DNA of 62,000 bases from Octopus vulgaris (taxonomy: Eukaryota). Made by a program: the position numbers and the translations under genes. The notes under the pieces are model-generated. The model worked only from the letters and a program-made list of their open reading frames with translations. It searched no databases and was not told where the DNA came from. Location: NCBI GenBank assembly GCA_951406725.2, contig OX597821.1:102320001-102382000 (forward strand), in the 5' to 3' direction. Every line of letters begins with the position of its first letter. Within the stretch, counting starts at the first letter, position 1. This document shows, one piece after another, positions 26,669 through 57,145 of the stretch.

Positions 26669-26711
26669 ATAGCGATGCAAACTTAGAGACTTTTCTTCGG
26701 TTAAATTCCAT
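26669..26711 (-). CDS. Weak candidate alternative first exon of TGIF (MEFNRRKVSKFASL)
   Basis: ATG at 26711, 14 codons plus 1 nt, donor GTATGT at 26668, phase 1 compatible with the homeobox exon. Lies in a CpG-richer, UTR-like stretch (26700-27160). Confidence 0.3.
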
Positions 26712-35920: not shown

Positions 35921-36004
35921 CTATGGGCTCGGAGAAATCCATATTGGCAGCAGTGTACTGTTGGTGGTTTTCAAACCATCCTATTTCTTCAGATGTAAAC
36001 ATTC
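35921..36004 (-). CDS. TGIF: Candidate upstream TGIF coding exon (84 bp, phase 1-1)
   Basis: Long pyrimidine tract plus TTCCAG acceptor, then GA-ATG at 36002: MFTSEEIGWFENHQQYTAANMDFSEPI. Donor is G/GTAAAT at 35920. It joins the homeobox exon in frame as ...EPI-D-NCSKRKR, at the position where vertebrate TGIF1 has PLDLS. Confidence 0.65.
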
Positions 36005-36183
36005 CTGGAAGAAAGAAAGAAAAAAAGATATCAAAAGAAGTCAAAACTGAGATGGAAATTCCAAACATTAGGTCATTTAACAAAGAAAGAAAAGTGGGAA
36101 AGGAGTAACGTAGAGGAAACACGAAACGAAAGAGGATTTTAAATAACGGTGTGAGAGAGAGGAGGACATCAGTACAATGTGTA

Positions 36184-36239
36184 TGTGTGTCTTTTCTCTT
36201 GACAGCTTGATTAATTATAAATGACCAGAGAGAGAGAAA
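36184..36239. promoter_or_regulatory. Duplicated 56-bp element, proximal copy (TGACAG + TGATTAAT + TATAAA)
   Basis: Identical to 57090-57145; about 180 bp upstream of the exon ATG at 36002. Confidence 0.6.
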
Positions 36240-36771
36240 ATATTGGACGGTCAAAATGCATTGCGGTATTTCGGCTGCCGTTACGTTGTGAGTTCAAATT
36301 CCGCTGAGGTCGACAAATTAAGTACCAGTTACGCACTGGGGTCGATGTAATCGACTTAATACCTATGTCTGTCCTTGTTTGTCCCCTCTATGTTTAGCCC
36401 CTTGTGGGTAATAAAGAAATAGGTATTTAGAATCAACATTAAAAAAAAAAAAAAAATTTTAATCATTCTGAGATGCTTAATAAATATGTACCAATCATGT
36501 TCCGGCGTACTACCGTATTTATTCGTGTATAAGTTGCAGCCCTAATTTAGTGTTGAATCTTTGTACAAAATATTTTCCATTCAGTTTTAGATTGCCCTGT
36601 GCATCGGACACCTCTCAGTTTTTCATAAAAATAAAATCAAGCATAAAAAAGTGCAACTCATGCACAAGTAAATACGGTTTATTAGATTGGTTGTGTCCTT
36701 TCTAGAGAATTTCTGGCCTTATACCAATTCTATACAAATCAATATATCACTGGTGTGTGATTTCTGCCTTA

Positions 36772-37087
36772 TCGCGTGGGTTAGTGGTCAGGGTAGTCGT
36801 TCATGATCGTAAGGTCGTGAGTTCGATTCCCGACGGTGCGTTGTGTTCTTGAGCAAGAGACTTTACTTCACGTTGCTCCGGTCTACGCAGTTAGCAAAAA
36901 TAAGTTATACCTGTAATTCCAAAGGCCAGCCATCTCACATCCTGTATCACGCTGAATCTCCACCAGGACTACGTTAAGAACACGCATGTCAGTAAAGTGC
37001 TCGGCTCCTTAAACGTTAATTTCACGAGCAAGCTGTTCAGTTAATCGGAGCAACTGGGACACTTGTCTTCGTAACCGACGGAGTACC
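36772..37087 (+). mobile_element. tRNA-derived CORE-like SINE family D
   Basis: B box GAGTTCGATTCCC, TGTGTTCTTGAGCAAGAGACTTTAC core, tail ...CGTAACCGACGGAGTACCA. Confidence 0.75.
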
Positions 37088-37172
37088 AGTTCCTAGGTGT
37101 ATTTTAACGAAAGTCTGCGACCTACTGCGCATTCTAGCAAAGAATTTCTTCTTAGAACCTACACCTCAAATT

Positions 37173-38015
37173 GGTACTTTTTGGTTATCTCAACCCCATT
37201 AAAAATTGGGTTATCTCCCCTCGGTTTTCAGAAAAATATCGAAACTTTTGGTTATCGCCTTCAACTAAAATATTGTTTAACAGTCAATAAAAAAAAAGAT
37301 GAAAAAATTAATAAACATATAAAAGGAAAAGATGAAACCGTTTTGAATCTGATAATATTTTTTAAAACAAATACAAAACTGAAAAAATTAAACATCTAGG
37401 CGCAGGAGTGGCTGTGTGGTAAGTAGCTTGCTAACCAACCACATGGTTCCGGGTTCAGTCCCACTGCGTGGCATCTTGGGCAAGTGTCTTCTGCTATAGC
37501 CCCGGGCCGACCAATGCCTTGTGAGTGGATTTGGTAGACGGAAACTGAAAGAAGCCTGTCGTATATATGTATATGTATGTGTGTGTGTGTTTGTGTGTGT
37601 GTGTTTGTCCCCCTAGCATTGCTTGACAACCGATGCTAGTGTGTTTACGTCCCCGTCACTTAGCGGTTCGGCAAAAGAGACCGATAGAATAAGTACTGGG
37701 CTTACAAAGAATAAGTCCCGGGGTCGATTTGCTCGACTAAAAGGCGGTGCTCCAGCATGGCCGCAGTCAAATGACTGAAACAAATAAAAGAGTAAAGAGT
37801 AAAAGAGTATCTTACTATCTAATAATATTTTTTATAACAAATCATACAATGTCTATCGAGGAGGCCAAACGCCAACAATGTGTCGAAGTATTGAATCAAA
37901 AGGATCTAAATCTTTTAATCCAATCTCTTGTCGCCTAACTCGATGTTTTAATGGGGAGGTAACCCAATTTTTTAATGGCAATTTTTCAAAGGGGGTGAGA
38001 TAACCAAAAAGTACC
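37173..38015. mobile_element. Merlin-like MITE family 1, copy 3, with internal full-length SINE
   Basis: TIR GGTACTTTTTGGTTATCTCA; perfect TSD CTCAAATT; SINE at 37399-37808. Confidence 0.82.
37399..37808 (+). mobile_element. tRNA-derived SINE family A, full-length reference copy
   Basis: Head TGGCTGTGTGG/GGGTTCAGTCC, CORE-like CTTGGGCAAGTGTCTT, internal (TA)n(TG)n, tail ...AAATGACTGAAACAA.TAAAAGAG. Confidence 0.9.
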
Positions 38016-38490
38016 CTCAAATTATGTAATATATATTTCATACTTATCTGTCTCCTCAACCGTTTATTATCATAATTATCATATACCTATTACTATAATC
38101 ATTATATCTAATCTTCCACTTAGTCTGCCTCAGAAGGCCATTTACACAGCAGGCATCAATCATCTTCGCGACACACTTAAAAGCAATATACTTTCTCCTT
38201 TTAACGCACCAATATTTCTGACTAAGCAACCTAGTTTAGACTAATAAAAATAATAAAATAGCGATACATTCCACAAGTCATAACATCAGTACCTAGACTG
38301 ACCTGCCAAACAACATCCGTGCTACTTTACACTACCTGTCAGTCATCTACTCCAACCACCCGAACCCCCTTCACCTACACACCTCCAACTATCCAAAGCA
38401 CCCTTCCTCACAAAACGGTGTTAAACGGAATGGACCCCCAATGCTGGTTGCCGCTGCTGCTGCTTTTAATAAACATCCCAGAACCAACTC

Positions 38491-38763
38491 CATCGGCACC
38501 TGTATTGACATGTAACACGTGTCAGGCTTTTAACGGTCTTAAAGCATTCATCACCACTGTCGTCGTTGATTAGCCTCTCCGCCCTGATTTAGCAAGATGT
38601 ATGATCAGAGACGTTCCAACCGTGACCATCAGCACCTGTATTGACATGTAACACGTGTCAGGCTTTTAACGGTCTTAAAGCATTCATTCACCACTGCCGT
38701 CGTTGATTAGCCTCTCCGCCCTGATTTAGCAAGATGTATGATCAGAGACGTTCCAACCGTGAC
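38491..38763. repeat. Near-perfect tandem duplication, 136/137-bp units
   Basis: Units start CATC(G/A)GCACCTG at 38491 and 38627; they differ by about 2 substitutions and 1 indel. Confidence 0.95.
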
Positions 38764-38926
38764 CACACCGTTTTTTTTTCTTTTCTAGCAAGCGTAGTGT
38801 ATCTAGGACTACATTATTCAGTGTATGCTCACATTAAGATGTTAGAGTTGGATCTTTTAAAATTCTTTCTAACCACCAGAATTTGCCAAATTTTACTAGA
38901 TTTTTAAAAACGTTTTCTACATTGAT

Positions 38927-39314
38927 ACTCTTTCACTCGCTTCAGCCATTTGGCTGCGGCCATGCTGGAGTACCGCCTTTAGTCGAGCAAATCGATCCCA
39001 GGACTTATTCTTTTTAAGTCTAGTACTTATTCTATCGTTCTCTTTTGCCGAACCGCTAAGTTACGGGGGACATAAACACACCAGCATCGGTTGTCAAGTG
39101 ATGTTGGGGAGACAAACACAGACACACACACACATATATATATATACATATATACGACGGGCTTCTTTCAGTTTCCGTCTACCAAATCCACTCACAAGGC
39201 TTTGGTCGGCCCGAGGTTATAGTAGAAGACTCTTGCCCAAGGTGCCACGCAGTGGGACTGAATCCGGAACCATGTGGTTGGTAAGCAAGCTTCTTACTAC
39301 ACAGCCACTCCTGC
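38927..39314 (-). mobile_element. SINE family A, young copy
   Basis: Near-full reverse-complement match to 37399-37808. Confidence 0.9.
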
Positions 39315-40299
39315 AAAAACTTTTATTATTAATAATTTCAAGAGTGGGGAGGGGGATGAATGTGATTTTCATCATTTGCAAACAAAACTACAACAGTGTG
39401 TCTGTGTGTGTGTGGGGGAAATGGTGGTTGGAAAGAATTTAAAAGGACACGCATAAAAGATTTGGCTGCTATTTCTAACAGATCAAGTGACTGCATGGAG
39501 GTCAACTACATATCGGTTCCAACTTACATCCTTTGTTCTAACGTTATACCGTACTGAAAGTCACTTGACCACGCCACCCCCCGTTCCACGTTTATAGTTC
39601 ATCATGTATCGACACATTTCAGCCTGAAACAGCTGGTGACTTCAACTACGACATCATCACACAGCTGAACTTTGTCTCAACCCTATAAAAATGTTTCATA
39701 TAATCCCTCAATCAAATAATAGACCACGTGGGAGCAACTTATTCGAGAAGCGCCCACCACCCAAGGTAGTTTTTTTGTTAGGCGTGCCATTCAGATAATC
39801 CCGCGGGCCGCAATTTGCCCATTACTAATCTAGATGTAGTAGGCTCTATAATAACAGTCTGAAGCCATTCCATCAAGATTTAACGAGGGAGTATCTACAC
39901 AATCGCTTGACCAGCTAGAAATAGTAGCCACCCCCTACTATTTGCTTAAAAGAAAGGACACGTTGTATAATGTATTCCTATTTCTTTGCTACCCACAAGG
40001 TGCCAAACACAGAGAGGACAAATAAGAACAGACAAACGGATTAAGTCGATTATATCGACACCAGTGCGCAACTGGTACTTATTTAATCGACCCCGAAAGG
40101 ATGAAAGATAAAGTCGACCCCGGCGGAATTTGAACGTTGTATAATGTATTCCACGATGCTCCAACAGACACAGTCGGAAGCTGGCGTGGTGCTTAGACAA
40201 CAAAAACGATCTTTCAGTGCATGAACCAACGAAACCATCTACATAGTCGCTAAATTGCTAGAAATAGAAGCTTAAATTTCCCGAACCCACAGTCTACAG

Positions 40300-40572
40300 C
40301 AGTGGTTCTCAACCATTGTTTGCCTATGAAACCCTTCTGATTCCTATTTTACTCGGCTGGACTCACCCCGCCCACCCAGATATTCGATGTTAATTTTAAC
40401 AGCAAAATCTTATGCGGGGTCCGCCCTTCGCTGCCCCCCTCGTCTCCCGTCCGCCGCCGCCGGTCGAAATCGTTTCGACCCGCAGCGGCCCGGTGTGCGG
40501 CAGTCGGATCGCAAACCGTTTTTGCTCCGCGAACGTTTCTTCGCGCGTTTCCCTGTCGGTTGAGAACCACTT
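40300..40572. mobile_element. hAT MITE of the 56099 family with GC-rich captured interior
   Basis: TIR CAGTGGTTCTCAACC/GGTTGAGAACCACT; the left third matches the 56099 copy; 40414-40558 is about 69% GC by manual count; no TSD. Confidence 0.75.
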
Positions 40573-43510
40573 CATAATACAATAAAATTATTTCGATTTG
40601 CTCCAAATGACGGTGGTCAGACATTAAAACCAAAAATGCCCTTCGTTTGTTCAAAATTAGTCTTCATTCGTTTAAACTTCTTTATCGTTAAGAGCATCGT
40701 TATTATTGATATGAAGGCTGCAAATTGGTAGAATCGTTAGAGAGTCGGTAAAAGTGCCTTGCGGTATTTGCCCCCAGCTCTTTATGTACTAAGATCAAAT
40801 CCTGCAGAGGTGTATTAGCCTTTCGCGGCCGATAAGACAAAGAACTAATTAAGTACTAGTGTCAATGGCATCCATTAATCTCGTCCCTTCAAAATTGTTG
40901 GCCCTGTGCCTAAATTAGAAACCTTTATTAATGATATCACCAAGACGGAGAGCTAGCAGAAATCAGCAGAGCACTGGATAAAAATACATTGCGGTATTTT
41001 ATGGAACTCATTATGTTCTAAGTTCAAATCCCGCCCGGGGTGGATGAATTAAAATACTATTTAAATTATGGGGACGTAAACAAACCAACACCGGTTGTTA
41101 AGCGGTGGGAAGTGAAACAAACACAGACGCGTACACACATATGCGACGGACTTCCACAGACTTTCCGTCAACCAAATTCACTCACAAGACATTGGTCGGC
41201 CCGGAACTATAGAAGCTACTTGCCCACGGTGTCGCGCGGTGGGATTGAACTTGAAATCACGTGGTTGCAAAGCGAACTTTTTACCCACACAGCCATATCT
41301 GCGTCTATGAAGATACCTTTTTACAAATATATTTTTCTAAAATCTATTTTCTTTCTTTTTTTTTTTTGTTATACTTTAGTTTCCATTTACGATGTAGTTG
41401 TTAAATTTTCTCTTGATATTCTGGCTTGCAATTTAAAATGTGTTATCGTTGTTAAACTACGTATTTTTGAATTAATTCAATATTTCATTCAGTCCAGCAT
41501 TTATTGCTATTCACAAATAATTGTTATATGAATAAATTATCTCTCTAAAACAATTGTTTCATTTAATGACTAATTAAAATTATGCGATGAAGGCGAATGG
41601 GATTAAATATTCTTTTTAAAAAAAATTAAATGCAAATTACAAATGTTTCAGAACGTGGAATACAATAAAATTACGGGGGGAGGGGAGAGAAAAAAGTGGT
41701 GGTTACTGCTCGCAAAGGCACGGTGAGGGTTTGCAGGCAATTAATAAGGCCCCGTTGTTTTGAAACGTAGGATCTAAAAAGACGGAGGGGGGTGGTGGAA
41801 AAAATCTTGACCATGATGGAGAAATTCCGACATATATGGAACACAGGGTCATCTTAAAAAATAAGCACACAGAGCAGTTGCCAGGGGCCTCGTGGGTCTA
41901 GGGGCCCAATTATGATCTATGTATACTGTGGTTAGCTGTCAAAAAAAGAAGAAAAAAACTACTACAGATCTCAGTACATTGATTGTCTCAGAGAACTGTA
42001 ATGCTTCTAAGACAGCTCTGGTGGGTCAGCTATTTAGAAAGTTCGTCAATTATGCAAGCGGGGGTTGTTTGTAAACTACAGCGGCTACTGTTTGTCACAT
42101 TTCAGTATGGAACAACTGCCTTTAAAAGCAATTCTAAACAATGAACAGAATACATACTTAATGCGTATGTACCATTAAAAGCCTTCTAAATTACGGTATT
42201 TATCTTGAGCGAGTTTCTCATGTAGACTTGTAGTGTTAAAAGCACAGAAAAATATCAGGAGCAGGGAAGGTTGCTTAGCAGCGGCGCTGGAATTGATAGA
42301 TCTAGAATTCTGCTTGTTAACTTCACCAGTAGCAAATATCCACGGCACCATCTTCCAAGCAACCTCAGTTGCCAGCTGATAAAGTTAAATAGTGATTGTA
42401 AAGTCACCGATGTTGCATTTATCTGGCAGGTTACAATAAATAAATAAATAATAGTCATTATTGGCAGCAGAAGCAATATTAGTTCAAAATTACGTTGATA
42501 AGACAGACTTGACTCAAAACGAAAACTGCAGTTTAGAAGGTTTTCAATAGTATATACACTTTAAGTAGGTATACAGATTGCCAATTCCGAACTACAGCAC
42601 TTCCGTCGCTAATAATGAACTCTAAATAATATACGCTGATCCATCAAATGTTAGCCCAGTTGTAACCAACCCGTCAACGTTTTCAAAGCGCATTGTGTAT
42701 CTAAGACATTATCCAACATATCCTTTTGTGAAATGAACTCTAAGGAAAAGGTGATTACATTAAATCGTTATTGTTGCTTTCACTTTCACTTTTGTGTTGT
42801 TTTGCAAATGAAGACTTTTTTTTAAAATCCCAAAAGAAAACAAATTTACTCAAAGATCGCCATTAACAAGTTTTTATTGCATGCCAAAATACTCAATCCC
42901 AACCAAATAATAATAATAATAATAATGGTTTCAAATTTTGGCACAAGGCCAGCATATTCGAGGGAGGGGATGAATCGAATACATCAACTCTAGTACTCAA
43001 CTGGTACTTATTTTATCGATTCAAAAAGAATGATAGGTAAAGTCGACCTAAGCGGAATATGAACTCAGAACGTAAAGGCAGACGAAATGCTGCTATATAT
43101 TTTGTTTGGGGGTGCTTCGCCACTTTAATTATAACAATTATTTCTAATTTTGGCACAAAGCCAGAAACTTTGAGGGGTGGGGGCAAGTCGATTACATTAA
43201 CACCATTACTTGACTAGTACTTTATTTTATCGATCCTGAAAGGATGAAAGACAAAGACGACCTCGGCGGGATTTGAACTCAGAACATAAAGAGCCGAAAG
43301 AATTACTGTAAAGCATTTTGTCCGAAGCGTTAACGATTCTGTCAATTAGCCTCAACAGTAATAATAATCTTCACCGGTTGCCAAACAAAATCGTACCAGC
43401 TGCTGATTGATGGAAGTGGAAACAAACTTAATGATCCCCTACAAGTTTAAGTAATTTGCACTTGGTACGGTTTTATGTATATTAGTCAACAAGATCTGAA
43501 CAATTTAGAC

Positions 43511-43793
43511 CAGGGCTGGCAAACCTGCGGACCGCTTGATACCTTCTTGAAGTATTGTTTAATTTCAAAATAAAATTGTGTAAAACATTTGTCTCAAAAT
43601 AAATAAAAAATTCATAAGTGGCAATAAAGCAATAGCCTACAATTTTATAATTTTAAACAAACGAAAAGTCTGAAAAATTCTTGATTCTGTAATTTGATTA
43701 TTTGACTATTAGTGCATAAAGTATACAAGCGCGCCCCACCCCACTTTCTGTGATTAAAGTGGCCCGCAATCTAACTCGAGTTGACTAGGCCTG
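43511..43793. mobile_element. hAT (Charlie-like) MITE
   Basis: Ends CAGGGCTGGCAAAC...GTTGACTAGGCCTG; 8-bp TSD ATTTAGAC/ATTTAAAC. Confidence 0.75.
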
Positions 43794-45157
43794 ATTTAAA
43801 CACACTGAGCTCAAGACCTTCAATCATCTCTCATGGTGAGACTAAATATCTGACACTTTCATTATGACATACGCCAGTAGCATACTTATAATGTTATAAG
43901 GTGTGCAAAATGAAAAATTAGGAGTTCCAAAAAATGGTCAGCTATTTAAAACAATACTATTTATAGGAAATTGACATTTTTTTTTTACATATTAAACGTA
44001 CATGACTAAACCTCTAAGTATACGAATGTAGATGCGTTTCAGAATGTGCAAACAAGACTGTTTTCGCTAATGTCGACCTACTCTTTTACTTGTTTCAGTC
44101 ATGTGACTGTGGCCATGCTGGAGCAACGCCTTTAGTCGAGCAAATCGACCACAGGACTTATTCTTTGTAAGCCTAGTACTTATTCTATCGGCTCGGCAAA
44201 ACAGAGCAATAGAATAGGTACCAAGTTAAAAATAAGCACCGGGATCGATTTGACTAAAAACCTGAAGGTGGTGCCCCAGCGTGGCCACAGTACAAAGACT
44301 GAAACAAGTAAAAGATAAAATGTATATATATGTATGCACACACTTTCACATTATATACCTGTGTACATATATAAATACATGTGTGATGAGTTTACAAAAA
44401 TGAGATAAGGGAAATGGGCTAATGGCAAGAAATTCAAGCCAGCAATGATGTACTGAATACATCATGAGAAAAGGAGGGGGAGGGGAAATGAAAGTTAACT
44501 AAAATATACAACTTAATTTAGAGTGGGGGAGAGGAACCTTTTCCTTTCTCCTAAAGGTACAAGGATTGAAATTTGGTGAGAGGAGACTAGTCGATTACAT
44601 TGACCCCTCCCAGTGCGTAACTGGTACTTAATTTATCGACCCCAGCGGAATTTGAACTCAGAACGTTCAGACAGACGAAATACTTATTTCTTTACTACCC
44701 ACAAGGGGCTAAACACAGAGAGGACAAACAAGGACAGACAAACAGATTAAGTCGATTATATCGACCCCAGTGCGTAACTGGTACTTATTTAATCAACCCC
44801 GAAAGGATGAAAGGCAAAGTCGACCTCGGCGGAATTTGAACTCAGAACGTAGCAGAAGACGAAATATCACTAAGCATTTCATCGTTGGAGCGGGGAACCT
44901 AATGCTACTTGTTAATGATTCCCAACGAAAAGGGGAGAGAATATCAAAGGATTAAGAATTAATGTCAACGAAATTTAAATTTCTTTTACAGGAATTAGCT
45001 TAAATTTATGTTATTGATTCACTTCAATAATTTACCTTGGTTCACATCACTTTGTGTAACTAGGTAAATTATACTGGACAACAACATTCTTCATCAATCC
45101 TCATTTCCTACTCAGAAAATCTCTGTCATCTGGTTAGAGCAAATTTGAAATGATTAT

Positions 45158-45194
45158 GATTTACAGATGAGGTCTAATAAATCTGGAACACGTC
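45158..45194 (+). ncRNA. Decayed hammerhead-like motif, second family
   Basis: CAGATGA-GGTC-TAATA-AATC-TGGAACACGTC; related copies at 6039-6075 and 15495-15531. Confidence 0.35.
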
Positions 45195-45705
45195 TATAGT
45201 TGTCACTTTGCAAGCTAACGAAGATCAGGTCTACTCTCACCTTAAATGTGGAAATTCAATTAACTGAGAAATTATTTCTTTCTTTATTGGAATTATCTCC
45301 TCTTTTCTTTGAGAGTTGCAAACAATTGCCATTAGGTTTTGTTTACTTTCTCCAACTGAGAGGTAAATAATGTTTCATTGAGAATTGTTTTTGCGTCTGT
45401 CATTTAGTACACACCATGACCTATGAGTGAGTGTGTGGAGTGGAGTATCATATTAAATATTTCCATATTTTGAGCATAGTTATTTATTAAGCTATGTAAG
45501 TGTGAGAAGAAATATTAGACACAGGTGTGTCTAAAATAACAGAACAAGACTGCACATCAAGGGTCAAAGAGAAGAGAGATCCTAAACAGATACATCAAAG
45601 TTGACAGTGAAATCATCCCAGCCTTGAGGCAATAGAACAGCAAGAATATTTTGGAAGCAAAGTCATAATTATAAAACTATTTTTCACACCAGGCACAATA
45701 AAATG

Positions 45706-46001
45706 CACTTGGTTCCCAAACTTTTCGGGCTGCCGCCCCCTTGACACTCAGGGCGCATTCCTAGCGCCCCCACCCCAACTAACCATCACAAACATTGACC
45801 TCTTTCTGAAGCAAATTCAAAGCGAATGTATTTCACAAATAAAACGTAACCTAATGAACCCATTATTTTGTTCTTTTTACATGAATTGCCCCAATTGTTA
45901 TATGAATCGCTACTCCATTATCACCCAACTTTTCTTCAATGTTCACTTGGACCTTTTCACTGGCCCCAGAGTGGCAATACTGCCCACCTTAGAAACCACT
46001 G
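45706..46001. mobile_element. Decayed hAT MITE
   Basis: Ends CACTTGGTTCCCAAAC...TTAGAAACCACTG. Confidence 0.5.
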
Positions 46002-47629: not shown

Positions 47630-47961
47630 TACACACACAACAGGCTTCTTTCAGTTTCCACATACCAAATCCACTCACATGGCTTTGATTGGCCTGGGAC
47701 TACAGTAGAAAGCACTTGCCCAAAGTAGCATGCAATGGGATTGGACACAGAATCATATACTCTTTTACTTGCTTCAGTCATATGACTGTGGCCATGCTGG
47801 AGCACTGCATTTAGTCGAGTAAATCGACCCCAGAACTTATTCTTTGTAAGCCTGGTACTTATATCAGTCTCTTTTGCCGAACCGCTAAGTTATGGGGACC
47901 TAAACACACCAGCATCGGTTGTCAAACGATGTAAGGGGGACAATCACAGACACAAACATAT

Positions 47962-48010
<49 letters not shown>

Positions 48011-48150
48011 GCTTCTTTCAGTTTCCGTCTACCAAATCCACTCACAAGGCTTTGGTCGGCCTGAGGATATAGAAGAAGACACTTGCCCAAGGTGCCATGC
48101 AGTGGGACTAAACCCGGAACCATGTGGTTGGTGAGCAAGCTACTTACCAC
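47630..48150 (-). mobile_element. SINE family A, partial plus full copy
   Basis: 47630-47750 fragment followed by 47758-48150. Confidence 0.85.
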
Positions 48151-49334
48151 AGGAATCTAGCAGTATATACATCTTTGTCAATATCTCAATATTTATAATT
48201 TTAATAGGTTTCATCCCCAACTGTCCTCAAGTGTTTTACTCATAGATATGTACATCATATCAGATTGTAGCTGAACTAGGAACCTTTAGTTTTAAACTAA
48301 ATGTAACAATGCTCTTATTGTTTGTACACAGGTTGTTGATCACAAAACTAGATGTGATTCATAGAGCTATGACAAAGATGATAGAACAAGAATCAAAAAC
48401 AGGATCTTGCGATCATGAGTGCAACCACAAACCACTAGGCCATGTGCCTTCACAATTAAGCAGTAAAAGGGAAAAATACTGTCAGACTAAGATTACATGT
48501 TTTGGCCTTATTCTGACCTTTTCAGCAAAGGAGAATCAGAATTTGTGAATAAATAATCACATCTTGGTGATGGGATCAAATAAGATGGTTTAAGTAGTCA
48601 AATAAGATGGTTTAATTTGTTATATCATTTAGCTTGGATGAAAATGACAAAGTTATAAATTATGATGTCTCACAATTGACTGTGGTTGGATAAGTTCTGC
48701 TTCTTTAGTGAAATGAATGAGCAAGAAAAGATGTACTTCTTTCCTTCTGCATTCATTTAGTTCCACTAAAAGAGCAGGACTGGTCTTACAATACCCAATA
48801 TCTTCATTGTGCAGGCATGGCTGTGTGGTTAAGAAGCTTGCTTTGCAACCATGTGGTTGTAAGTTCAGTTCTACTGAACAGCATCTTGAGTAAGTGATTC
48901 TTCTATAACTTTCAGTTAACCAATACCTTCTGAGTGAATTTGGTACATAGAAACTGTGTGGAAGCTTGCTGCTGTATGTGTGTATATATCTATGCATGTA
49001 TGTCCTCTCTGACCCACCTAACAACAGGTATTGGTTTGTTTATGTTACCTTAACTTAGCAGTTCAGCAAGAGACTAATGAAATAAGTACCATACAAAGAG
49101 GAAGGGGAAGTACTGGGGTTGATTTGTTCAACTAAAACTATTCAATGTGCGCTTCAGCATGGCCACAGTCCAGTGATTGAAACAAATTTAAAGACCAGTT
49201 TCTTTTCATATCTAGATGTGATTAACTTTTGCCTTCATCTCTAAGGAACGAATAAAATTAACTGACAATTCTTCAAAAAAACAAACAAAAAAAAAACATT
49301 ATGCAACAAAAAGAATAACTTTAGTCAGCCATAA

Positions 49335-49915
49335 CCCTTCGAACATATCTGGCCCGAACATTCTTCTTGTTTTATGCTCAAACTGGCCAGATCTGACCTC
49401 TTACACATACCTTACAATGTTATTCTAAAAATAATCACATCATCAAAATCTTGAGACTCCAAGATAATGCACGGCTAATTCAAAATAATGTGATTAAATC
49501 TCCTAATATAATAATGAGTGTATTTTATGTATGTGTGTGTGTATTTACACTTGATAAGATCGATATTTAAATTAACGATCTTATCCTTATATATATATAT
49601 ATATATTTGTCCAGAATGACGCTGGACGCAGAGAAAATAGTAATTCAGTGAAGGAGAGGGAGTGAGAGAAAGTAGTAGCAATGACAAAAAGGAAGGGGTG
49701 AAAAAAAAAATCAGTGTTTCAACTCTGTGCGAGTATATATGTGTATGTGTGTGTGTGTAGAAGGGAAGTATGTGAATGTTTGTATGCGAGATTATTACGT
49801 ACCTTACTTATATATAAAATACTACAATTCGCTGTCATTATTGACGGAACATGGTCAGCTAGTCATCATCATCATCATCATCATCATTTGACAGAGTAAT
49901 CTGAATGCTAAAGGG
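49335..49915. mobile_element. piggyBac-like MITE interrupted by microsatellite-rich DNA
   Basis: ATAA-CCCTT...TTTGACAGAGTAATCTGAATGCTAAAGGG-TTAA; same family as 16340. Confidence 0.6.
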
Positions 49916-50316
49916 TTAATAAAACTAAAGCAAAACAAGTTTTCTTCAGTTAATACTTATCAGTGTGGATCCTAATTCTAAAGATAAGTGATATTGCTTC
50001 CAAATGAGGAGGGGAAACTGTTCTTGGTAGACATTGTGTTGCAACAAGAAGTTCTTTGTGAAACTGACACCTTCTAATGACTTCCATTTATTACTAGAAT
50101 TGGTTATACCACGTAGGCTTCAAATGTACACAAAACGAAAAGACAGAGACATCAAAATGGACAATGAGAATCCTACCCCACCACAAAAGCGAAAGCTTTG
50201 ACACATTATACTCCTTTGCAAAACTGAAAGCTTCTGCATAAAGGGACAGTATTAAATTATTTCTGTTTAATTGTATATTACACTGGGTAAAATAGAAAAA
50301 TTGGTATTAAAAATTG

Positions 50317-51000
50317 AGAGCGGCTGTGTGGTAAGTAGCTTGCTTACCGACCACACAGTTGCGGGTTCAGTCCCACTGTGTGACACCTTGGGCAAGTGAC
50401 CTGCTATAGCTTTGGGCCGACCAAAGCCTTGTGAGTAGATTTGGTAGACGGAAACTGAAAGAAGGCCGTTGTATATTTGTATGTATATATGTGTGTGTTT
50501 GTTGCCCCACCATCGTGTGACAACTGATGTTAGTGTGTTTACATCCCTGTAAATACGCAGTTCGGTACAAGAGACTGATAGAATAAGTACTAGGCTTACA
50601 AAGAATAAGTCCTGTGGTTGATTTGTTCGACTAAAGGTGGTGCTCCAGTATGACCACAGTCAAATAACTGAAACGATAAAAGACTAATAGAATATATATA
50701 TATATATATATATATATTTTTCTGTTTTTTACTTGTTTCAGTCATTGCACTGGCCATGCTGGGGCACCACCTTGAAAGAGTTAGTCAAGCAAACCAACCC
50801 GAGTACATATTCTTAAATCTGGTAATTATTTTATTGCTTACTTTTGCCAAACTGCTAAGCTATCAGAACAAAAACAAACCAACACCAGTTGTCAAGAGGT
50901 AGCAGTGGAGACAAACACAAACCCAAAGACACACACGACAGGCTTCCACAGTTTCTGTCTACTAAATCCAAATACAAGTCGATTGGCCCCAGGGCTATAG
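50317..51000. mobile_element. Tail-to-tail family-A SINE pair
   Basis: 50317-50680 (+), (TA)n spacer, 50718-51000 (-, decayed). Confidence 0.8.
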
Positions 51001-51494
51001 AAAAAGACACACAGTAAGACTAAATGTAAAGCAACCTTAATTAACCACGCGTTATTTCTACTAACACAGGATGGATGAGACTTACTTAGCAGTGTTCTAT
51101 GACTAGATGCCATACCTGTCACCAACCCTTGTCCCTCCGCTTCCAATAAGGTACTTGAGTTTCACTGGTCTTCACACAACACTGACAAAATGATCAAACT
51201 ACTTAAGGGATAAACAAATGCACAATTGCTGCAGCAGTGTCAATGTGAAGACACACAGAGACAAACATACATGTGCACGCACACACACAAGTGAAGTCAC
51301 ATGACCAAGTGGTGCATGGTGTTTCTGAGCCTTAAGATACTTTGTTTCACACAGCTCCACCCTATGCAACTGAAAATGAGTACCAGCCAAGTGCTGGAGT
51401 AGTCCGCTATTCCTTCAACTGTCACATCCTCAATGCTTCACAGCAACGAGAGTGAGACAGTGGGATAATGTCCATGTCATTCTGTGATTATGTG

Positions 51495-51705
51495 CAAGGG
51501 GTTGCTGAAAAGTTCCCAGCTTTAAAGATATCACAAAAGGTCTGGTTGGAAACCCAGCCTTCCGAGTTCTTTCACAGGGCTTAGAAAAACTGAAGGACCA
51601 CTGCACTAAGTGTGAATCTAAGAGGGGAATATATTAAATAAAATCCTAACTGATTCTCCTGTATTTTCTTTTACCCAAATCCAAGAACTTTTCAGCACCC
51701 TCTTG
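51495..51705 (+). mobile_element. mariner-derived MITE
   Basis: TIR CAAGGGGTTGCTGAAAAGTTC/GAACTTTTCAGCACCCTCTTG; the interior keeps a broken transposase C-terminus (..GLEKLKDHCTKC..LRGEYIK*). Confidence 0.7.
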
Positions 51706-54358
51706 TAAGTGCCTAAACCAATTAGCAAAAGCATGGCAAAACTCTCAGATTATACTGATAGCTGTGGTGAGAAAAATTGAGTTCTGGAAATGCTATGCTG
51801 TGGGTTCTCCGCCCATTACAGAGACTCTCTCCTCCAGCCTCTTTCCCCCTTCCTCTGGCTCCTACAGACTACCCAAGCATGTCATATCCTCACCACCACC
51901 CTATGACTGTATCATCTTTACCCCTCTTGTGGCTTGCTACCCTAAAACTTCTGCACCTCTCTATCTTCCCCATTCCATCATTCTTGTTTCAACCTGTCAA
52001 CCCTATCCATTTTGGCAGTCTGCCTCTCCACCACTCATTCTCCTTCCCATACAATTTTGCAAACCAACCGCTCACCTACCCACTTCTACTTAGCTTGTAA
52101 CTTGTGGGGTCTCCTAGGGACCTCATTACCATTATCTATATTTTGCAACTCTTCTTTTTCTCTCTCCCATTTTCCCCTACTAGTTCTCAGTAGTTATAAA
52201 AATCCATCTACAGGAACCTACCCTGTCCCATCACACAGTATTCCCCTCATCCTCTAGCACAAAGATGACTTCACCTCCAGGGTTTGTAGTCCTGCAAAAT
52301 GCATGGCAATCTCAATAGTACAGGTGGTATGGAAAAAACCCTTCAAAGTGGTGCCTCAGCCTGGCCAGTCTAATGAATGAAACAAAGTCAATGTTTCATG
52401 CTTATGCAAAATCCCATTTCAATCCCATTTTAACATCTCACGGAAGAAGGTAATTATGATAGAACTGATGGTTCTGTGAGAAGATGGGCATGAGGAAACT
52501 TCAAAGAGAGAAGCTATTATGTGCCAGAATCTGGTCCAACAACGAAGAGAAAAAGGTTGGATATTCTGGTTATTTCCAGTTGAAGCTGGATGCAGGAGGT
52601 TCCCAGCACAGTCTGTTGGAAAATGTTGACAGTTGTGGGAATGGTAAGAAGGGAAAGGATGATAGCTGCTCACAGGTTGGGGGACGAAGCACAAAGAGGA
52701 CCATGCTGGTGCTGGAGCAAGCAGGAAGAGTTGAGCTGAAAGGCAGGTGAACAGTGACTGCCCAATTATTGCTGACCCACAATAAGAGGGTGTTGTGGCT
52801 TCGAGTTGAAATGTCTAAGGAAAGCTGGACACAACTTGATGACACTCTGGGTCCAAAGCGACAGTTGTGGGTGTATGACTTATTCTGTTGGTATTTCTAG
52901 TGGATGTATCTAACAGTAAATCTGTGTGTGTGACATGATTGATCAGACTATCGGATGTCGTTATACATTGCTGGTCACAATGTACTTTGCATCATATTAG
53001 CTTTTGAATGACGCTACCCTGCTGATATCAATATTACACCTGATCTAAGATGGTGAGCTGGCAGAAACGCTAGTACGGTGGGGGAAATGCTTAGTAGTAG
53101 TTCATCTGTCTTTATATTCTGAGTTCAAATTCCTCTGAGGTCGACTTTGCCTTTCATCCTTTCGGGGTCGATAAATTAAGTACAAGTTACGTACAAGAGT
53201 TGATCTAATCAACTGGCCACCTCCCCCAAAATTTCAGGCCTTGAACCTAAAGTAGCAAAAGAATATTACTCCTGATTGTAAGGCTTATCCATCACTGGGT
53301 TACCTATTTACAGCTGATGGGATTGGAGCAGAGTGAAATGAAGTGTTTTGCTCAAGAATCCAATGTGCAGCTGGTTTGGGAATTAAAATCATGATCTCTC
53401 TTAACCACTAGGCTATGTAGGCATGGCTGTAAGGTAAAAAGTTAGCTCCCCAACCATATGGTTCTGGGCTCAATCCCACTATGGCCAAGTGTCTTCTACC
53501 ATAGTCTCGAGCCAACCAAACCCTTGTGAGTGGATTTGGTATTTGGAAACTGAAAGAAGCTCATTATACATTTGTGTGTGTGTGTGTCCTGCAATACTGC
53601 TTGATAACTGGTATTGGTGTGTTTACATACCCGTACAAAAGAGACTGACAAAGTAAGTATCAGGCTCAGATAAAAAAAACAAAAAAACTATGGGGTTAAT
53701 TTGGTTGATTAAGATTCTGGCCAGTAAAAACATAAAACATAAAAGACTATATATATATATATATATTTATATGACACACATGCAGACACAGAGGAATTGT
53801 TGCTTATTACTTCTCCTCATCGATTATTTCACAGTGAAACTAAATGTAGATGCATATGACACTATTTAATTATTCATCCTCCACACAATATAGATTATCT
53901 TGTAACAATTGTTGGATTTGTTAACCTTTCATCAACTAAAAGGGAAATTTCAATTAATTATGTTTGTATACTGTTGCAGTGTGGTACGAAGCTTGCTTCC
54001 CAACCACACGGTCTCGGGTTCAGTTCCACTGTGTGATACCTTGGGCAAGTGTATTCTACTATAGCCTTAAGCTGACCAAAGAATTGTCAGTGGATTTAGA
54101 CAGAAACTGATAGATGACCATGTGTGTGTGTGTGTGAGTGTGTGTTACTGTCTCCTTGCCTTGATTATATGTGACAACTGTAAATGAATGTCAATGTGAT
54201 GCAAGCAGCATGCTTCATTTCCAATCTATGAAAGTAATGTTTAGGGATATATTACCTAGCTTGAAAACATGTGAGAGTTAGCGATAGGAAAGGTATCTGG
54301 TGGTAGAAAATCCGCCCCATGCAAGTGCAAAAAAAAAAAAGGACGTTAAATCGATGAT

Positions 54359-54839
54359 GGGCGCAGGTAAAGGACATGGACTGCACCCCCTTTCGGTTAT
54401 TTATTTATTTTTTTTCTACAGAAACCCACTTTTTCAACTGTGGAGATTCCGAATCTGAAAAAAAAAAAAAAAAAAGGCATCACGTTTTCTAAATTTTAAT
54501 TTCTCCCACCCTTTTTTTTCCTTTACCAGAGGGAAAACTAACATTTTGAAAACGTGTTTTTGGGGTTTTAAAAATCTTCAGTTTTTAAGTATGCTCCAAC
54601 AGGAAAGTCCGACAAGCTAGAAACAACAGCCAAACTTAAGATCCACTTTCTAAATATGAATTACCAAAAGACCCTCAACCACAACGTTTACTTTCTGTCA
54701 CAGGTGCGCTGACGGAGTGGAGGGGTGTTTATTTATTTATTTTAGAAAACTTTAAATTTTACAAAATTTTCTGTAGCAAAAAAAAAAAAAAATTAAATAA
54801 ATAAAAAACGAAAAGGGGTGCAGTCCTTTACTTCCGTCC
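54359..54839. mobile_element. TIR element inserted in the (GAT)n tail of an RTE fragment
   Basis: IR GTAAAGGAC..TGCACCCC.TTTCG / CGAAAAGGGGTGCAGTCCTTTAC; TSD unclear. Confidence 0.65.
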
Positions 54840-54904
54840 GATGACGATTACTCCATAGCTTATTTGTCAAAATACATGCAATTAGCTCATTTGAATTTCC
54901 GCCC

Positions 54905-55235
54905 CGCCTTTAGTCGAGTAAATCGATCCCAGGACTTATTCTTTGTAAGCCTGGTACTTATTCTATCGGTCTCTTTTGCCGAACCGCTATGTTACGGGGA
55001 CGTAAACACACCAGTATCGGCTGTTAAGCGATGATGGGGGGGGGGCAAACACAGACACACACGCATATATATATATACATATATACGACGGGCTTCTTTC
55101 GGTTTCCGTCTACCAAATCCACTCACAAGATTTTGGTCGGCCCGAGGCTATAGTAGAAAACACTTGCCCAAGGTGCCACGCAGTGGGACTGAACCTGGAA
55201 CCGTGTGGTTCGTAACTTATCACACACCCACTCCA
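54905..55235 (-). mobile_element. SINE family A
   Basis: Match to the family consensus. Confidence 0.85.
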
Positions 55236-56098
55236 ACTCGATAAAATTTTTAAATTTTGCTACTTTATCCCAACATATTAAGAAGGAAGTGTGAAGAGGG
55301 ATCTTGATGAGCTGAAAAGACAAGTGAAGCCAGTCAGTGCAATCAACATCCAAAGATGCCGAAAAGATTCACATGGACGAGTCCGTATATCTGTTTTTGA
55401 CAAGTGTAATTAAGAGGAACCAGTTCACCGTTTACACCGGTAAGACTTAATTCTAGTTACACTTGTCATCTAGTAATCAATGAGTTCGTTTTCATGGCAA
55501 TTGGAACGTTTTCTCTGCAAGGATGGCCACGAAGATAAGAAAACTGCAACCAACTCTTTCTCTTGCACTACTACGGCTTAAAAACGCAATCGAGCTGAAT
55601 TGCTAGAAACAGCAGACAAATTTTCCCTATCATCCACCCTTATTGACTAGCAAGAATACATTCGCGAATGCAATCCTATATTGTGTCTCAAAAAGCTGGT
55701 TGGATGGTCACAACAGGAATTGTTTTGATCAGGGACGACATGGGGTTAAACATCAACAGCAAACAAAAGTGAATTTCAACGGTTAATAAAAAGAAAAAGA
55801 AACCCGATGTTTCCTTTCCTCTGATAATAAGCTTACTATTTTTTTTTTTTAATTAACAAGTGTATGTTAATAAATAAAAATGCCAAATTAAATTTGACTT
55901 ATGTTAAGTAATTCTACAAAGAGGGAAAATGGTAAAATATAAGGTAAATCTGGATGTATGACAAAAAAATAACGTGAAACTAAAATAACATGGACCTACT
56001 ATAACTTTAAAAAAAACAATACACATACACAAGTCAAATAGGTAGCCCTTACGAGGATTCTCGAAGTACTAAAAACCCCAGCAAATATCCCTCTAAAC

Positions 56099-56412
56099 CA
56101 GGGGTTCTCAACCATTTCTTTTTATCTTTGATTAGTATTTTATTCTGGTGGACCCCCATAGACATTTGATGTTTGACTAGTTTCATAGGAACTTCTTTAA
56201 ACATTTTCATTTTGTTTTTCACACATTAACTTGTGTAAATTGAACAATGTAAAATGTTAGAGAAAAAAACCTAGCTATTTCTTGCAATACATATCAATAC
56301 ACACATCTAATGCAAAGTTTTTTTCAGGGGCCCTTAAAATACTATTGTGGAGCCCCAGTTTACAATTTTGGACTCCCAACAATTTTGTATGGATCCCGGT
56401 TGAGAACCACTG
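56099..56412. mobile_element. hAT (Charlie-like) MITE
   Basis: TIR CAGGGGTTCTCAACC/GGTTGAGAACCACTG; TSD CTCTAAAC/CTCTAAGC. Confidence 0.85.
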
Positions 56413-56569
56413 CTCTAAGCACACTCTTAGTTAAGAAAACGTGTAGCCCCAACATACACAAACATACAAATGGGATGGTCAAGGCTGGGACGGCTTTGAT
56501 TAAAATTAGGCCTGCTCGATCAGGGGTGATGGTGGTGGGAGCTAAATAACAATAACAATTTTGTCTTAC

Positions 56570-56579
56570 CTGAATTCAT
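56570..56579 (-). CDS. TGIF: Candidate first coding exon of TGIF (ATG AAT TCA G), preceded by probable 5' UTR up to about 57100
   Basis: Strong donor CAG/GTAAGA at 56569, phase 1. In frame with the 36004 acceptor (MNSG-MFTS...) and with the 18215 acceptor (MNSD-NCS...). Very short, so it could be chance. Confidence 0.4.
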
Positions 56580-57089
56580 TTTCCCAAAACGGAAATATAT
56601 ATAACTTTCGGTAGTGGTTGGTGGGGGCGGGGAACTTACGTTTTTAGCTTTATCTTCTTTCGTTAGAAAATTAAATTTAAGAAGAAAATATCTTCAAATC
56701 CTGCCTTTTAAGTGAGGCTTTAAAAATGCTGTGAACATATACTTTCCCCATAATCACTTCATTTGCAGAAGCAAACAAATAAAACATTATCTCGAACTTA
56801 ATACCCGCAGACAATATATATAAATATGAATATAAAATATATAAACAATTAAACAACGTGAAGGGAAAATATGTAAACAAACAAAACAGCAAGAAAAAAA
56901 AAAAAGAAACCAACAAAAAACAAAACAAACAAACAAACAATAAATAAATAAATAAATAAAAAAAATTAAACAAAACCTCAACTTGCGATGTGACTGGAGC
57001 AGAAAGCGAACATATTCTAGGAAGAGAGAAACGAGTGAAAGGTTGGGGGTGTGGAGGAGGAGGAGGAGGAGGACATGTGTGTGTGTGTG

Positions 57090-57145
57090 TGTGTGTCTTT
57101 TCTCTTGACAGCTTGATTAATTATAAATGACCAGAGAGAGAGAAA
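57090..57145. promoter_or_regulatory. Duplicated 56-bp element, distal copy
   Basis: Identical to 36184-36239; about 510 bp upstream of the candidate ATG at 56579. Confidence 0.6.

What the first reader, a model, noticed from the sequence alone, without database searches (positions are those of the whole stretch)
36148..57145. Identical 56-bp TALE/Hox-motif element duplicated 20.9 kb apart, each copy ahead of a 5' exon of a TALE homeobox gene
Seen: 36184-36239 and 57090-57145 are base-for-base identical. The non-repetitive core is CTTTTCTCTTGACAGCTTGATTAATTATAAATGACCA. Looser homology continues through GGTGTG-(GA-rich)-GGACAT on the gene-proximal side, where microsatellite lengths differ, and further flanks are unrelated. 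Each copy lies 180-510 bp upstream of a candidate TGIF 5' coding exon. Established: TGACAG/CTGTCA is the site bound by TGIF/Meis/Pknox; TGATTAAT is a Pbx-Hox site; adjacent Meis and Pbx-Hox sites typify trimeric TALE-Hox enhancers. Inference: a duplicated promoter module held identical by selection or gene conversion, giving twin promoters with possible autoregulation by the TGIF product. The TATAAA reads on the plus strand, so antisense or bidirectional initiation is also possible.
Basis: partly seen in the sequence, partly recalled or inferred. Interest (0 to 1): 0.72.

Follow-up and report, generated by a model that had tools for sequence, protein, structure and literature searches.

The report
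Young duplicate of TGIF2 leader element
A roughly 95-base piece of the front end of the octopus TGIF2 homeobox gene was copied 21 kb downstream, to just ahead of exon 2; the copies are identical because the copy is young, and the original has a probable cuttlefish counterpart, so it may be a real regulatory site.

Summary
Window 36184-36239 and 57090-57145 are identical 56/56. Looser homology spans 36148-36239 and 57048-57145. The 37-bp core occurs only at these two places in the 2.8-Gb genome, so it is not a transposon. An independent O. sinensis assembly has both copies, so it is not an assembly artefact.

The gene is TGIF2 on the minus strand of Octopus vulgaris. Copy 2 lies among the alternative first exons: 442 bp after the exon-1a donor, 77 bp before the X1 ATG and 511 bp before the canonical MNS ATG. 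Copy 1 lies 180 bp before exon 2, next to a SINE.

Copy 2 is the parent. O. bimaculoides has it in place and keeps a flank motif that copy 1 still carries but O. vulgaris and O. sinensis copy 2 have lost. Copy 1 already has three substitutions in O. sinensis, one in the core. Youth therefore explains the identity; selection or gene conversion is not needed.

Within Octopus the element is no better conserved than the surrounding introns. A 65-nt stretch of the cuttlefish TGIF 5' leader does match it far above background. It keeps CTTGATKAATTAT (a TGATNNAT type site) but not TGACAG, and it is transcribed. "Twin promoters" and TGIF autoregulation remain untested.

The parts
57048..57145 (-). Copy 2, the parental block. 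In gene sense it reads (TC)n, 37-bp core (57097-57133), (AC)n, ATG TCC(n), CACACC. It lies in the TGIF2 5' region between alternative first exons.
   Evidence: The core is present with 0 mismatches at the orthologous place in O. bimaculoides (L005:10430-10466) and O. sinensis (L007:10465-10501).
36148..36239 (-). Copy 1, the derived block (core 36191-36227), 180 bp upstream of the exon-2 acceptor in gene sense.
   Evidence: It is present in O. sinensis with 3 substitutions. It keeps ATTGTACTGATGTCC, as O. bimaculoides copy 2 does.
36254..36457 (+). tRNA-derived SINE with a poly(A) tail at 36441-36457. It abuts the gene-upstream side of copy 1 and belongs to a family with many copies in the window.
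   Evidence: The O. sinensis orthologue is more complete.
57587..57599 (-). Coding part of alternative first exon 1a (isoform X2): ATG AGA AAG CAA G|gt.
56983..57013 (-). Coding part of alternative exon 1b (isoform X1, MFAFCSSHIA); ATG at 57013, 77 bp downstream of copy 2. An acceptor-like ttcctag| sits at about 57017.
57017..57076 (-). Small upstream ORF beginning inside the duplicated block (ATG TCC TCC ... TAG). It stays in frame in three Octopus species and stops 3 nt before the X1 ATG.
   Evidence: Read from the alignment and the sequence. Whether it is translated is inference.
56570..56579 (-). Coding part of first exon 1c (isoform X3, MNS-G). This is the canonical first exon, because cuttlefish MDPG|IYG... 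aligns to MNSG|MFT...
45036..45087 (-). Alternative first coding exon of the O. vulgaris model CAI9727281 (MLLSSIIYLVTQSDVNQ-G).
35921..36004 (-). Exon 2 (GA ATG TTT ... EPI G), shared by most isoforms; it holds the ATG of isoform X4.
   Evidence: It is conserved in Argonauta.
26667..26711 (-). Alternative first coding exon of isoform X5 (MEFNRRKVSKFASL...).
17446..18215 (-). Last exon: the whole TALE homeodomain, the C-terminal region and the stop codon.
   Evidence: PF05920 at 60.7 bits; ORF; 99% identical to O. sinensis TGIF2; closest solved structure is the TGIF1 homeodomain 6FQP.

Best explanation
The two copies are a small direct duplication of about 95 bp, unique in the genome, inside the Octopus vulgaris TGIF2 gene.

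Copy 2 (57048-57145) is the original. It sits in the gene's 5' region among three alternative first exons. The equivalent region in cuttlefish is a transcribed 5' leader longer than 1.1 kb.

Copy 1 (36148-36239) is a secondary copy. It was placed 180 bp upstream of exon 2, beside a SINE. This happened after copy 2 had its full ATTGTACTGATGTCC flank and before O. vulgaris and O. sinensis split. It probably also happened after O. bimaculoides split off. Both block boundaries fall in simple-sequence tracts, (TC)n and CACACC. I therefore infer a short templated insertion (template switching or break repair that used the nearby 5' region as template). An old exon-plus-promoter duplication is less likely.

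The copies are identical in O. vulgaris because too little time has passed for substitutions. Selection or gene conversion is not required.

Function is inferred and not shown. The AT-rich half of the core, CTTGAT(T/G)AATTAT, is most likely a real homeodomain-factor binding site of the TGIF 5' region (TGATNNAT PBX-HOX type, or another TAAT-binding factor). Copy 1 is most likely a neutral passenger that happens to carry the same site close to exon 2.
For: Uniqueness: only 2 copies in 2.8 Gb.

Both copies are also present in O. sinensis.

Parent and daughter: copy 2 lies in a collinear orthologous block in O. bimaculoides with the core at 0 mismatches. O. bimaculoides copy 2 keeps CATTGTACTGATGgCC. 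Copy 1 shares this motif, but O. vulgaris and O. sinensis copy 2 have lost it.

No flank homology exists beyond the block.

Neutral yardsticks: O. vulgaris against O. sinensis is 97.7% identical over 51 kb, and against O. bimaculoides 93.7% over 22 kb. The element's 64-bp perfect run is one of 19 runs that long. The 1.1-kb 5' region is no better conserved than the introns.

O. sinensis copy 1 carries 3 derived substitutions; O. vulgaris copy 1 carries none.

Cuttlefish: the best local hit of the octopus block in the TGIF leader falls at the positionally equivalent place. The joint sense plus antisense score is 28, against a maximum of 24 in 138 kb of control DNA. The only repeat of 11 nt or more in the cuttlefish leader is an inverted pair of CTTGATGAATTAT. 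This differs from the octopus motif only at an N position of TGATNNAT.
Against: The orthologue of copy 1 in O. bimaculoides is hidden by an assembly gap (L005:22240-23383). The age of the duplication therefore rests on a weak clock argument: no substitutions on the O. vulgaris copy-1 lineage in about 67 unique positions, which has P of about 0.12 if the copy were older than that split.

No transcript 5' ends, chromatin data or binding data were available. A promoter or enhancer role for either copy cannot be excluded.

The cuttlefish homology is short, its orientation is ambiguous, and it rests on one clade.

The templated-insertion mechanism is inferred only from block size, orientation, proximity and simple-sequence boundaries. 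No empty site was seen.
Confidence: 0.6

Rival explanations
1. The block is a promoter or enhancer module, and both copies are functional. Each drives or modulates transcription from the 5' exon downstream of it. Input comes from Meis/Prep/TGIF (TGACAG) plus Pbx-Hox (TGATTAAT), possibly including feedback by TGIF2 itself. Purifying selection keeps the copies alike.
For: The motifs are present exactly as stated, and their literature assignments are correct. The TGIF2 homeodomain keeps the TGIF1 recognition helix. Each copy precedes a real 5' exon. In gene sense a TATA-like TTTATAAT lies about 30 bp before the (CA)n tract, and a short conserved uORF follows in copy 2. The AT-rich half seems conserved in the cuttlefish TGIF leader, where it is present twice.
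Against: Copy 1 evolves at or above the neutral rate in O. sinensis, including a core change. Within Octopus the element is not better conserved than the introns. TGACAG is absent from the cuttlefish counterpart. That counterpart lies about 700 nt inside the longest assembled transcript, so it is not upstream of that transcript's 5' end. Octopus copy 2 lies downstream of exon 1a. Argonauta has no copy within 10 kb upstream of exon 2.
Confidence: 0.2
2. An old duplication (an ancient tandem duplication of first exon plus promoter) in which everything but the block has decayed. Recurrent gene conversion between the copies maintains the present identity.
For: The copies are 56/56 identical in O. 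vulgaris with unrelated flanks. Both copies lie ahead of exons that begin ATG TTY.
Against: The 9-bp indel next to the core has not been homogenised in either species. O. sinensis copy 1 differs from O. sinensis copy 2 at 3 sites. No residual similarity is seen between the downstream exons or the flanks. A 95-bp island is a poor substrate for sustained conversion (established knowledge, not tested here).
Confidence: 0.08
3. A fragment of a mobile element, a small RNA gene, or an assembly artefact.
For: The block is flanked by microsatellites and a SINE.
Against: There are only two copies in the genome. RNA fold z-scores are -0.4 and -0.6 in gene sense, and no fold is shared by both copies. Rfam gives only sub-threshold hits from microsatellites. 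No coding signal and no protein-database hits were found. Both copies are present in a second species' assembly.
Confidence: 0.03

Closest known systems
Meis/Prep plus Pbx-Hox composite elements (for example the vertebrate Meis2 enhancer with a TGATNNAT site used in PMC8707757; Hoxb1 and Hoxb2 r4 autoregulatory elements, from my own knowledge)
   Same: A TGATNNAT site (TGATTAAT) lies 2 bp from a TGACAG half-site, near a developmental TALE homeobox gene. The single octopus-cuttlefish difference in the motif falls on a degenerate N position.
   Different: No binding or reporter data exist. TGACAG is not kept in cuttlefish. Conservation extends to CTTGAT.AATTAT, which fits other TAAT-binding factors (POU, Lhx, Antp class) equally well. 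The Meis-Pbx order and spacing differ from the classic TGATTGACAG heterodimer site.
Short templated insertions and small intrachromosomal duplications from template switching or break repair (FoSTeS/MMBIR-type events; my own knowledge)
   Same: A segment of about 95 bp copied in direct orientation from a site 21 kb away on the same chromosome. The boundaries lie in simple-sequence tracts. The flanks are unrelated. The event is specific to one lineage.
   Different: No empty site was seen, no junction microhomology was resolved to the base, and a SINE lies at one junction. The mechanism is inferred.
Repeated promoter elements ahead of alternative first exons (for example the conserved sequence element of clustered protocadherin variable exons; my own knowledge)
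   Same: The same short sequence sits ahead of different 5' exons of one gene.
   Different: There are only two copies, and one is recent and drifting. No TSS evidence exists. The cuttlefish homologue is transcribed. The exons themselves are not paralogous.
Conserved non-coding elements in 5' leaders of developmental transcription-factor genes
   Same: Copy 2 and its cuttlefish match are the only detectable similarity between the two otherwise unalignable TGIF leaders.
   Different: The match is very short (about 15 plus 17 nt), its orientation is ambiguous, and within Octopus it is no better conserved than neutral sequence.

Membership tests
Transposable element, SINE or MITE fragment | Many dispersed copies in the genome | tested here: not met
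   Two matches only at up to 3 mismatches in 2.8 Gb. BLAST with 106 bp finds the same two places.
Meis/Prep-Pbx-Hox composite element | A TGATNNAT Pbx-Hox site | tested here: met
   TGATTAAT is in both copies. The cuttlefish counterpart has TGATGAAT, twice. The motif definition is from PMC8707757.
Meis/Prep-Pbx-Hox composite element | An adjacent TGACAG (Meis/Prep/TGIF) site that is conserved together with the Pbx-Hox site | tested here: not met
   The site is present in the three Octopus species. It is absent next to either cuttlefish motif, and one cuttlefish allele deletes that flank.
Meis/Prep-Pbx-Hox composite element | Binding by the factors and factor-dependent enhancer activity | not testable with these tools
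   This needs EMSA, CUT&Tag or reporter assays.
Core promoter (TATA plus initiator) | A TATA-like box about 25-35 bp upstream of a mapped transcription start | not testable with these tools
   TATAAATG is on the + strand and TTTATAAT on the gene strand. No octopus 5'-end data could be reached.
Core promoter (TATA plus initiator) | The element lies upstream of the transcribed region | tested here: not met
   For the cuttlefish homologue, the element is at L012:682-744, about 700 nt inside the longest collinear transcript contig. Contig starts are scattered. Octopus copy 2 is downstream of exon 1a. An additional internal TSS is not excluded.
Duplicates homogenised by gene conversion (concerted evolution) | Paralogues within a species are more alike than orthologues between species, across the whole shared tract | tested here: not met
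   O. sinensis copy 1 differs from O. sinensis copy 2 at 3 sites, whereas copy 2 is identical between species. The 9-bp indel persists in both species.
Recent small templated duplication | Two copies with unrelated flanks, in the same orientation, near each other | tested here: met
Recent small templated duplication | The daughter copy is absent at the orthologous site of an outgroup (an empty site) | tested here: inconclusive
   The O. bimaculoides site falls in the N-run L005:22240-23383. Argonauta introns cannot be aligned, and Argonauta has no copy within 10 kb upstream of exon 2.
Structured RNA or miRNA | A stable fold shared by both copies, or a match to a family model | tested here: not met
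   Fold z-scores are -0.37 and -0.63 in gene sense, and +0.24 and -2.38 in antisense; only one copy folds well. Rfam hits fall far below the gathering scores.
TGIF-class TALE homeobox gene (the host gene) | A TALE homeodomain with a TGIF-type recognition helix | tested here: met
   PF05920 at 60.7 bits. The best solved relative is the TGIF1 homeodomain 6FQP at E 2e-24, with NWYINARRR against NWFINARRR. The source databases name it TGIF2.

The most novel reading that the evidence does not exclude
CTTGAT(T/G)AATTAT, with its TC-rich arm, is an ancient coleoid cis-element of the TGIF 5' region that has been multiplied independently in two lineages. Cuttlefish carry an inverted pair 576 nt apart. 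The O. vulgaris lineage carries a direct pair 21 kb apart. In this reading copy 1 gives exon-2-proximal transcripts the same homeodomain (Pbx-Hox or TGIF) input, so it acts as a newly born alternative promoter or enhancer.
Probability: 0.12. Interest if true: 0.5.

Novelty: new member of a known kind. Interest (0 to 1): 0.3.

Why it matters
In itself this is an ordinary small duplication. Two points give it modest value.

First, it is a dated example of a short regulatory-region fragment being copied within a developmental gene. The age bracket comes from a shared flank motif and a later deletion. Events like this are raw material for new alternative promoters or enhancers.

Second, the parental copy marks the only detectable similarity between the octopus and cuttlefish TGIF leaders. 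It is a 13-15 nt homeodomain-type site that cuttlefish carry twice. That gives a concrete, mutable candidate site for studying TGIF regulation in cephalopods, where almost no cis-elements have been defined.

Tried and rejected
- **Transposon or repeat:** rejected by the genome-wide pattern count and BLAST.
- **Larger decayed segmental duplication:** local alignment of the upstream and downstream flanks found only low-complexity similarity.
- **RNA gene or hairpin:** folding both strands of both copies and searching Rfam found nothing shared or significant.
- **Coding sequence:** the open frames across the copies have no start codons and no database relatives.
- **Chimeric retro-insertion with the adjoining SINE (template switch):** rejected because the SINE is + sense while the block is TGIF2-sense on the - strand. 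No clear target-site duplication was found.
- **Empty site from paralogous repeat copies:** the right flank holds an old repeat only from 36508 onward, so the junction itself is unique.
- **Orthologue of copy 1 in O. bimaculoides:** it falls in an assembly gap.
- **Argonauta:** only exons and SINEs align to the window, and the fetched locus does not reach the first exons.
- **Octopus transcript or other-species contigs through ORFs over exon 2 upstream and over copy 2:** no hits.
- **TSS from cuttlefish contig ends:** the ends are scattered at 1, 20, 60, 697, 725, 937, 1068 and 1109, so they are uninformative.
- **A third copy in the window:** matches to CTTGATKAATTAT at up to 2 mismatches are at chance level, 8 found against 7.9 expected.

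Full report
**1. Observation**

The two stretches are identical base for base: 36184-36239 equals 57090-57145, 56/56. The 37-bp non-repetitive core lies at 36191-36227 and 57097-57133, and dinucleotide shuffles of the window give no such match.

In the whole 2.8-Gb assembly (window = G000:C8:102320001-102382000) the core occurs only at these two places, even with 3 mismatches allowed. A BLAST search with 106 bp finds only the same two places.

Looser homology continues on the gene-proximal side through (AC)n, ATGTCC, a TCC/TC tract and CACACC. The shared block is therefore 36148-36239 against 57048-57145. Beyond that the flanks are unrelated.

**2. Gene context**

A Homeobox_KN (TALE) match lies at window 18028-18147 on the minus strand, inside a 269-codon open frame. 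That frame is 99% identical to O. sinensis "homeobox protein TGIF2" and identical to an Octopus vulgaris entry at the diagnostic VGNDYHDR site. The window is therefore O. vulgaris TGIF2, transcribed right to left. Its homeodomain is closest to the solved TGIF1 homeodomain and keeps the recognition helix.

Mapping the annotated isoforms gives this structure on the minus strand:
- exon 1a, MRKQ-G, 57599-57587
- exon 1b, MFAFCSSHIA, 57013-56983
- exon 1c, MNS-G, 56579-56570
- an O. vulgaris-model exon, 45087-45036
- exon 2, 36004-35921
- an X5 exon near 26711
- the last exon, 18215-17446

Copy 2 lies 442 bp downstream of the exon-1a donor. It is 77 bp upstream of the X1 ATG and 511 bp upstream of the MNS ATG. 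Copy 1 lies 180 bp upstream of the exon-2 acceptor.

The cuttlefish protein starts MDPG|IYG..., which aligns to octopus MNSG|MFT.... Exon 1c is therefore the canonical first exon.

**3. Which copy is the parent, and how old is the duplication?**

I fetched the orthologous loci of O. bimaculoides (L005), O. sinensis (L007) and Argonauta hians (L006).

Copy 2 evidence:
- It sits in a collinear 3-kb orthologous block in O. bimaculoides, with the core unchanged.
- It is also present in O. sinensis.

Copy 1 evidence:
- It is present in O. sinensis at the orthologous place beside the same SINE.
- There it carries three derived substitutions: G to T inside the core, C to T in the CA tract, and CCTCC to CCTTC.

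O. bimaculoides copy 2 keeps CATTGTACTGATGgCC after the (AC)n tract. Copy 1 of O. vulgaris and O. sinensis has the same motif (CATTGTACTGATGTCC). Copy 2 of those two species has lost 9 bp of it.

The inferred order of events is therefore:
1. Copy 1 was copied from an undeleted copy-2-type sequence.
2. Copy 2 then suffered the deletion.
3. O. vulgaris and O. sinensis then split.

The unhomogenised indel and the O. sinensis substitutions argue against ongoing gene conversion.

The O. bimaculoides orthologue of copy 1 falls in an assembly gap (L005:22240-23383), so its presence there is unknown. Argonauta has no copy within 10 kb upstream of exon 2. Only exons and SINEs align at that evolutionary distance.

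**4. Is the identity more than neutral expectation?**

Substitution identity across the locus is 97.7% for O. vulgaris against O. sinensis (51 kb). It is 93.7% for O. vulgaris against O. bimaculoides (22 kb alignable).

About 0.8 substitutions per lineage are expected in the roughly 67 unique positions of the block since the vulgaris-sinensis split. O. vulgaris copy 1 has 0 and O. sinensis copy 1 has 3. Neither suggests constraint.

The element's 64-bp perfect run between O. vulgaris and O. bimaculoides is one of 19 runs that long in the locus. The 1.1-kb 5' region (91-95% identity) is no better conserved than the introns.

If copy 1 predated the O. bimaculoides split, about 2 substitutions would be expected on its lineage, and 0 are seen (P about 0.12). 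The duplication is therefore probably, but not certainly, younger than that split. Youth is a sufficient explanation for the perfect identity.

**5. What the block is not**

- It is not a transposon (two copies only).
- It is not a structured RNA. Gene-sense fold z-scores are -0.4 and -0.6, and Rfam gives only microsatellite-driven sub-threshold hits.
- It is not coding.
- It is not the remnant of a larger detectable duplication.
- It is not an assembly artefact, because a second species has both copies.

The adjoining SINE (36254-36457, + sense, poly(A) at 36441-36457) is antisense to the block. A template-switch retro-chimera therefore does not fit.

**6. Deep conservation**

A cluster of cuttlefish TGIF sequences, which includes Acanthosepion pharaonis TGIF1, supplied spliced transcript contigs with a collinear 5' leader of at least 1122 nt.

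The best local match of the octopus block to that leader is at L012:690-744 (ATAATTCATCAAGCT...). This lies about 400 nt upstream of the ATG, which is positionally comparable to copy 2.

Scores for this match:
- A 45-nt core scores 15 there. The maximum is 14 in 134 control chunks of decapod and Argonauta DNA, and 1 of 108 window chunks reaches 15.
- The antisense orientation gives a second hit, GTCTGTCTTTTCGCTTG, 15/17, in the same 65 nt.
- The joint score is 28, against a maximum of 24 in 138 kb of control sequence.

The orientation is ambiguous because the element is quasi-palindromic, with TTTTCTCT and AGAGAAAA arms.

The only repeat of 11 nt or more in the whole cuttlefish leader is an inverted pair of CTTGATGAATTAT, at 123-135 and 712-724. 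This is the octopus CTTGATTAATTAT with one change, and that change falls on a degenerate position of TGATNNAT.

TGACAG has no counterpart in cuttlefish. One cuttlefish allele (L013) deletes the flank where it would lie.

I read this as good but not conclusive evidence for two things. The AT-rich half of copy 2 is an old cis-element of the TGIF 5' region, and in cuttlefish it lies inside transcribed sequence.

**7. Mechanism (shown against inferred)**

Shown:
- The duplication is locus-specific.
- Its direction is copy 2 to copy 1.
- Its timing is bracketed by the shared flank motif and the later deletion.
- There is no sign of extra constraint within Octopus.
- There is a probable cuttlefish homologue.

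Inferred:
- Origin as a short templated insertion, with junctions in simple-sequence tracts.
- Function of CTTGATKAATTAT as a homeodomain-factor site. The PBX-HOX reading fits (PMC8707757), but so do other TAAT-binding factors.
- Copy 1 as a neutral passenger.

TGIF autoregulation is biochemically plausible. TTGACAGCT equals the start of the TGIF1 co-crystal site (PMC6158717), and the recognition helix is conserved. It has no comparative support.

A TATA-like box occurs in both orientations, and a short conserved uORF starts inside the block at 57076-57017. Both are compatible with a downstream TSS. No 5'-end data were available to test this.

**8. Verdict**

The "held identical" and "twin promoter" inferences are not supported by what could be tested. 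The duplication is an ordinary young copy. The modest interest lies in the parental element as a candidate coleoid-conserved homeodomain site at TGIF.

Noticed in passing
L012:123-135 and L012:712-724 (cuttlefish TGIF transcript contig): The only repeat of 11 nt or more in the 1125-nt cuttlefish TGIF leader is an inverted pair of CTTGATGAATTAT, 576 nt apart. It is the same motif as the octopus core with one change.
   Followed up: partly
window 57017-57076 (minus strand): A short upstream ORF (ATG TCC TCC ... TAG) starts inside the duplicated block. It stays in frame in O. vulgaris, O. sinensis and O. bimaculoides despite TCC-repeat length changes, and it stops 3 nt before the X1 ATG. Copy 1 keeps the ATGTCC start.
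   Followed up: partly
G000:C20, about 22.80-23.20 Mb: At least ten Homeobox_KN (TALE) matches lie in tandem on the same strand. This looks like a lineage-specific TALE homeobox gene array.
   Followed up: no
window 36254-36457 and L007:30640-30900: The SINE next to copy 1 has two internal deletions in O. vulgaris relative to O. sinensis (27 bp and 55 bp). The 55-bp deletion lies between two copies of the internal AAATGC.T.GCGGTATTT segment.
   Followed up: partly
window 9361-9373: A third near-match of the motif (CTTGATTAATTAG on the minus strand; TAATTAATCAAGC on the plus strand) lies 3' of the gene. The count of such near-matches in the window is at chance level.
   Followed up: yes
window 57014-57020: A strong acceptor-like site, tttctctcttcctag|AATATG, lies directly before the X1 ATG. 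'Exon 1b' may therefore be an internal cassette exon and not a first exon with its own promoter.
   Followed up: no
L013:690-720 against L012:712-745: One cuttlefish transcript contig lacks 15 nt (CTTTACACACATACA) directly after ATAATTCATCAAG. This is an allele or a close-species difference in the flank that corresponds to the octopus TGACAG side.
   Followed up: no
window 36508-36684: An old dispersed repeat of about 170 bp (72-88% identical copies on many chromosomes) lies 50 bp beyond the SINE tail.
   Followed up: partly
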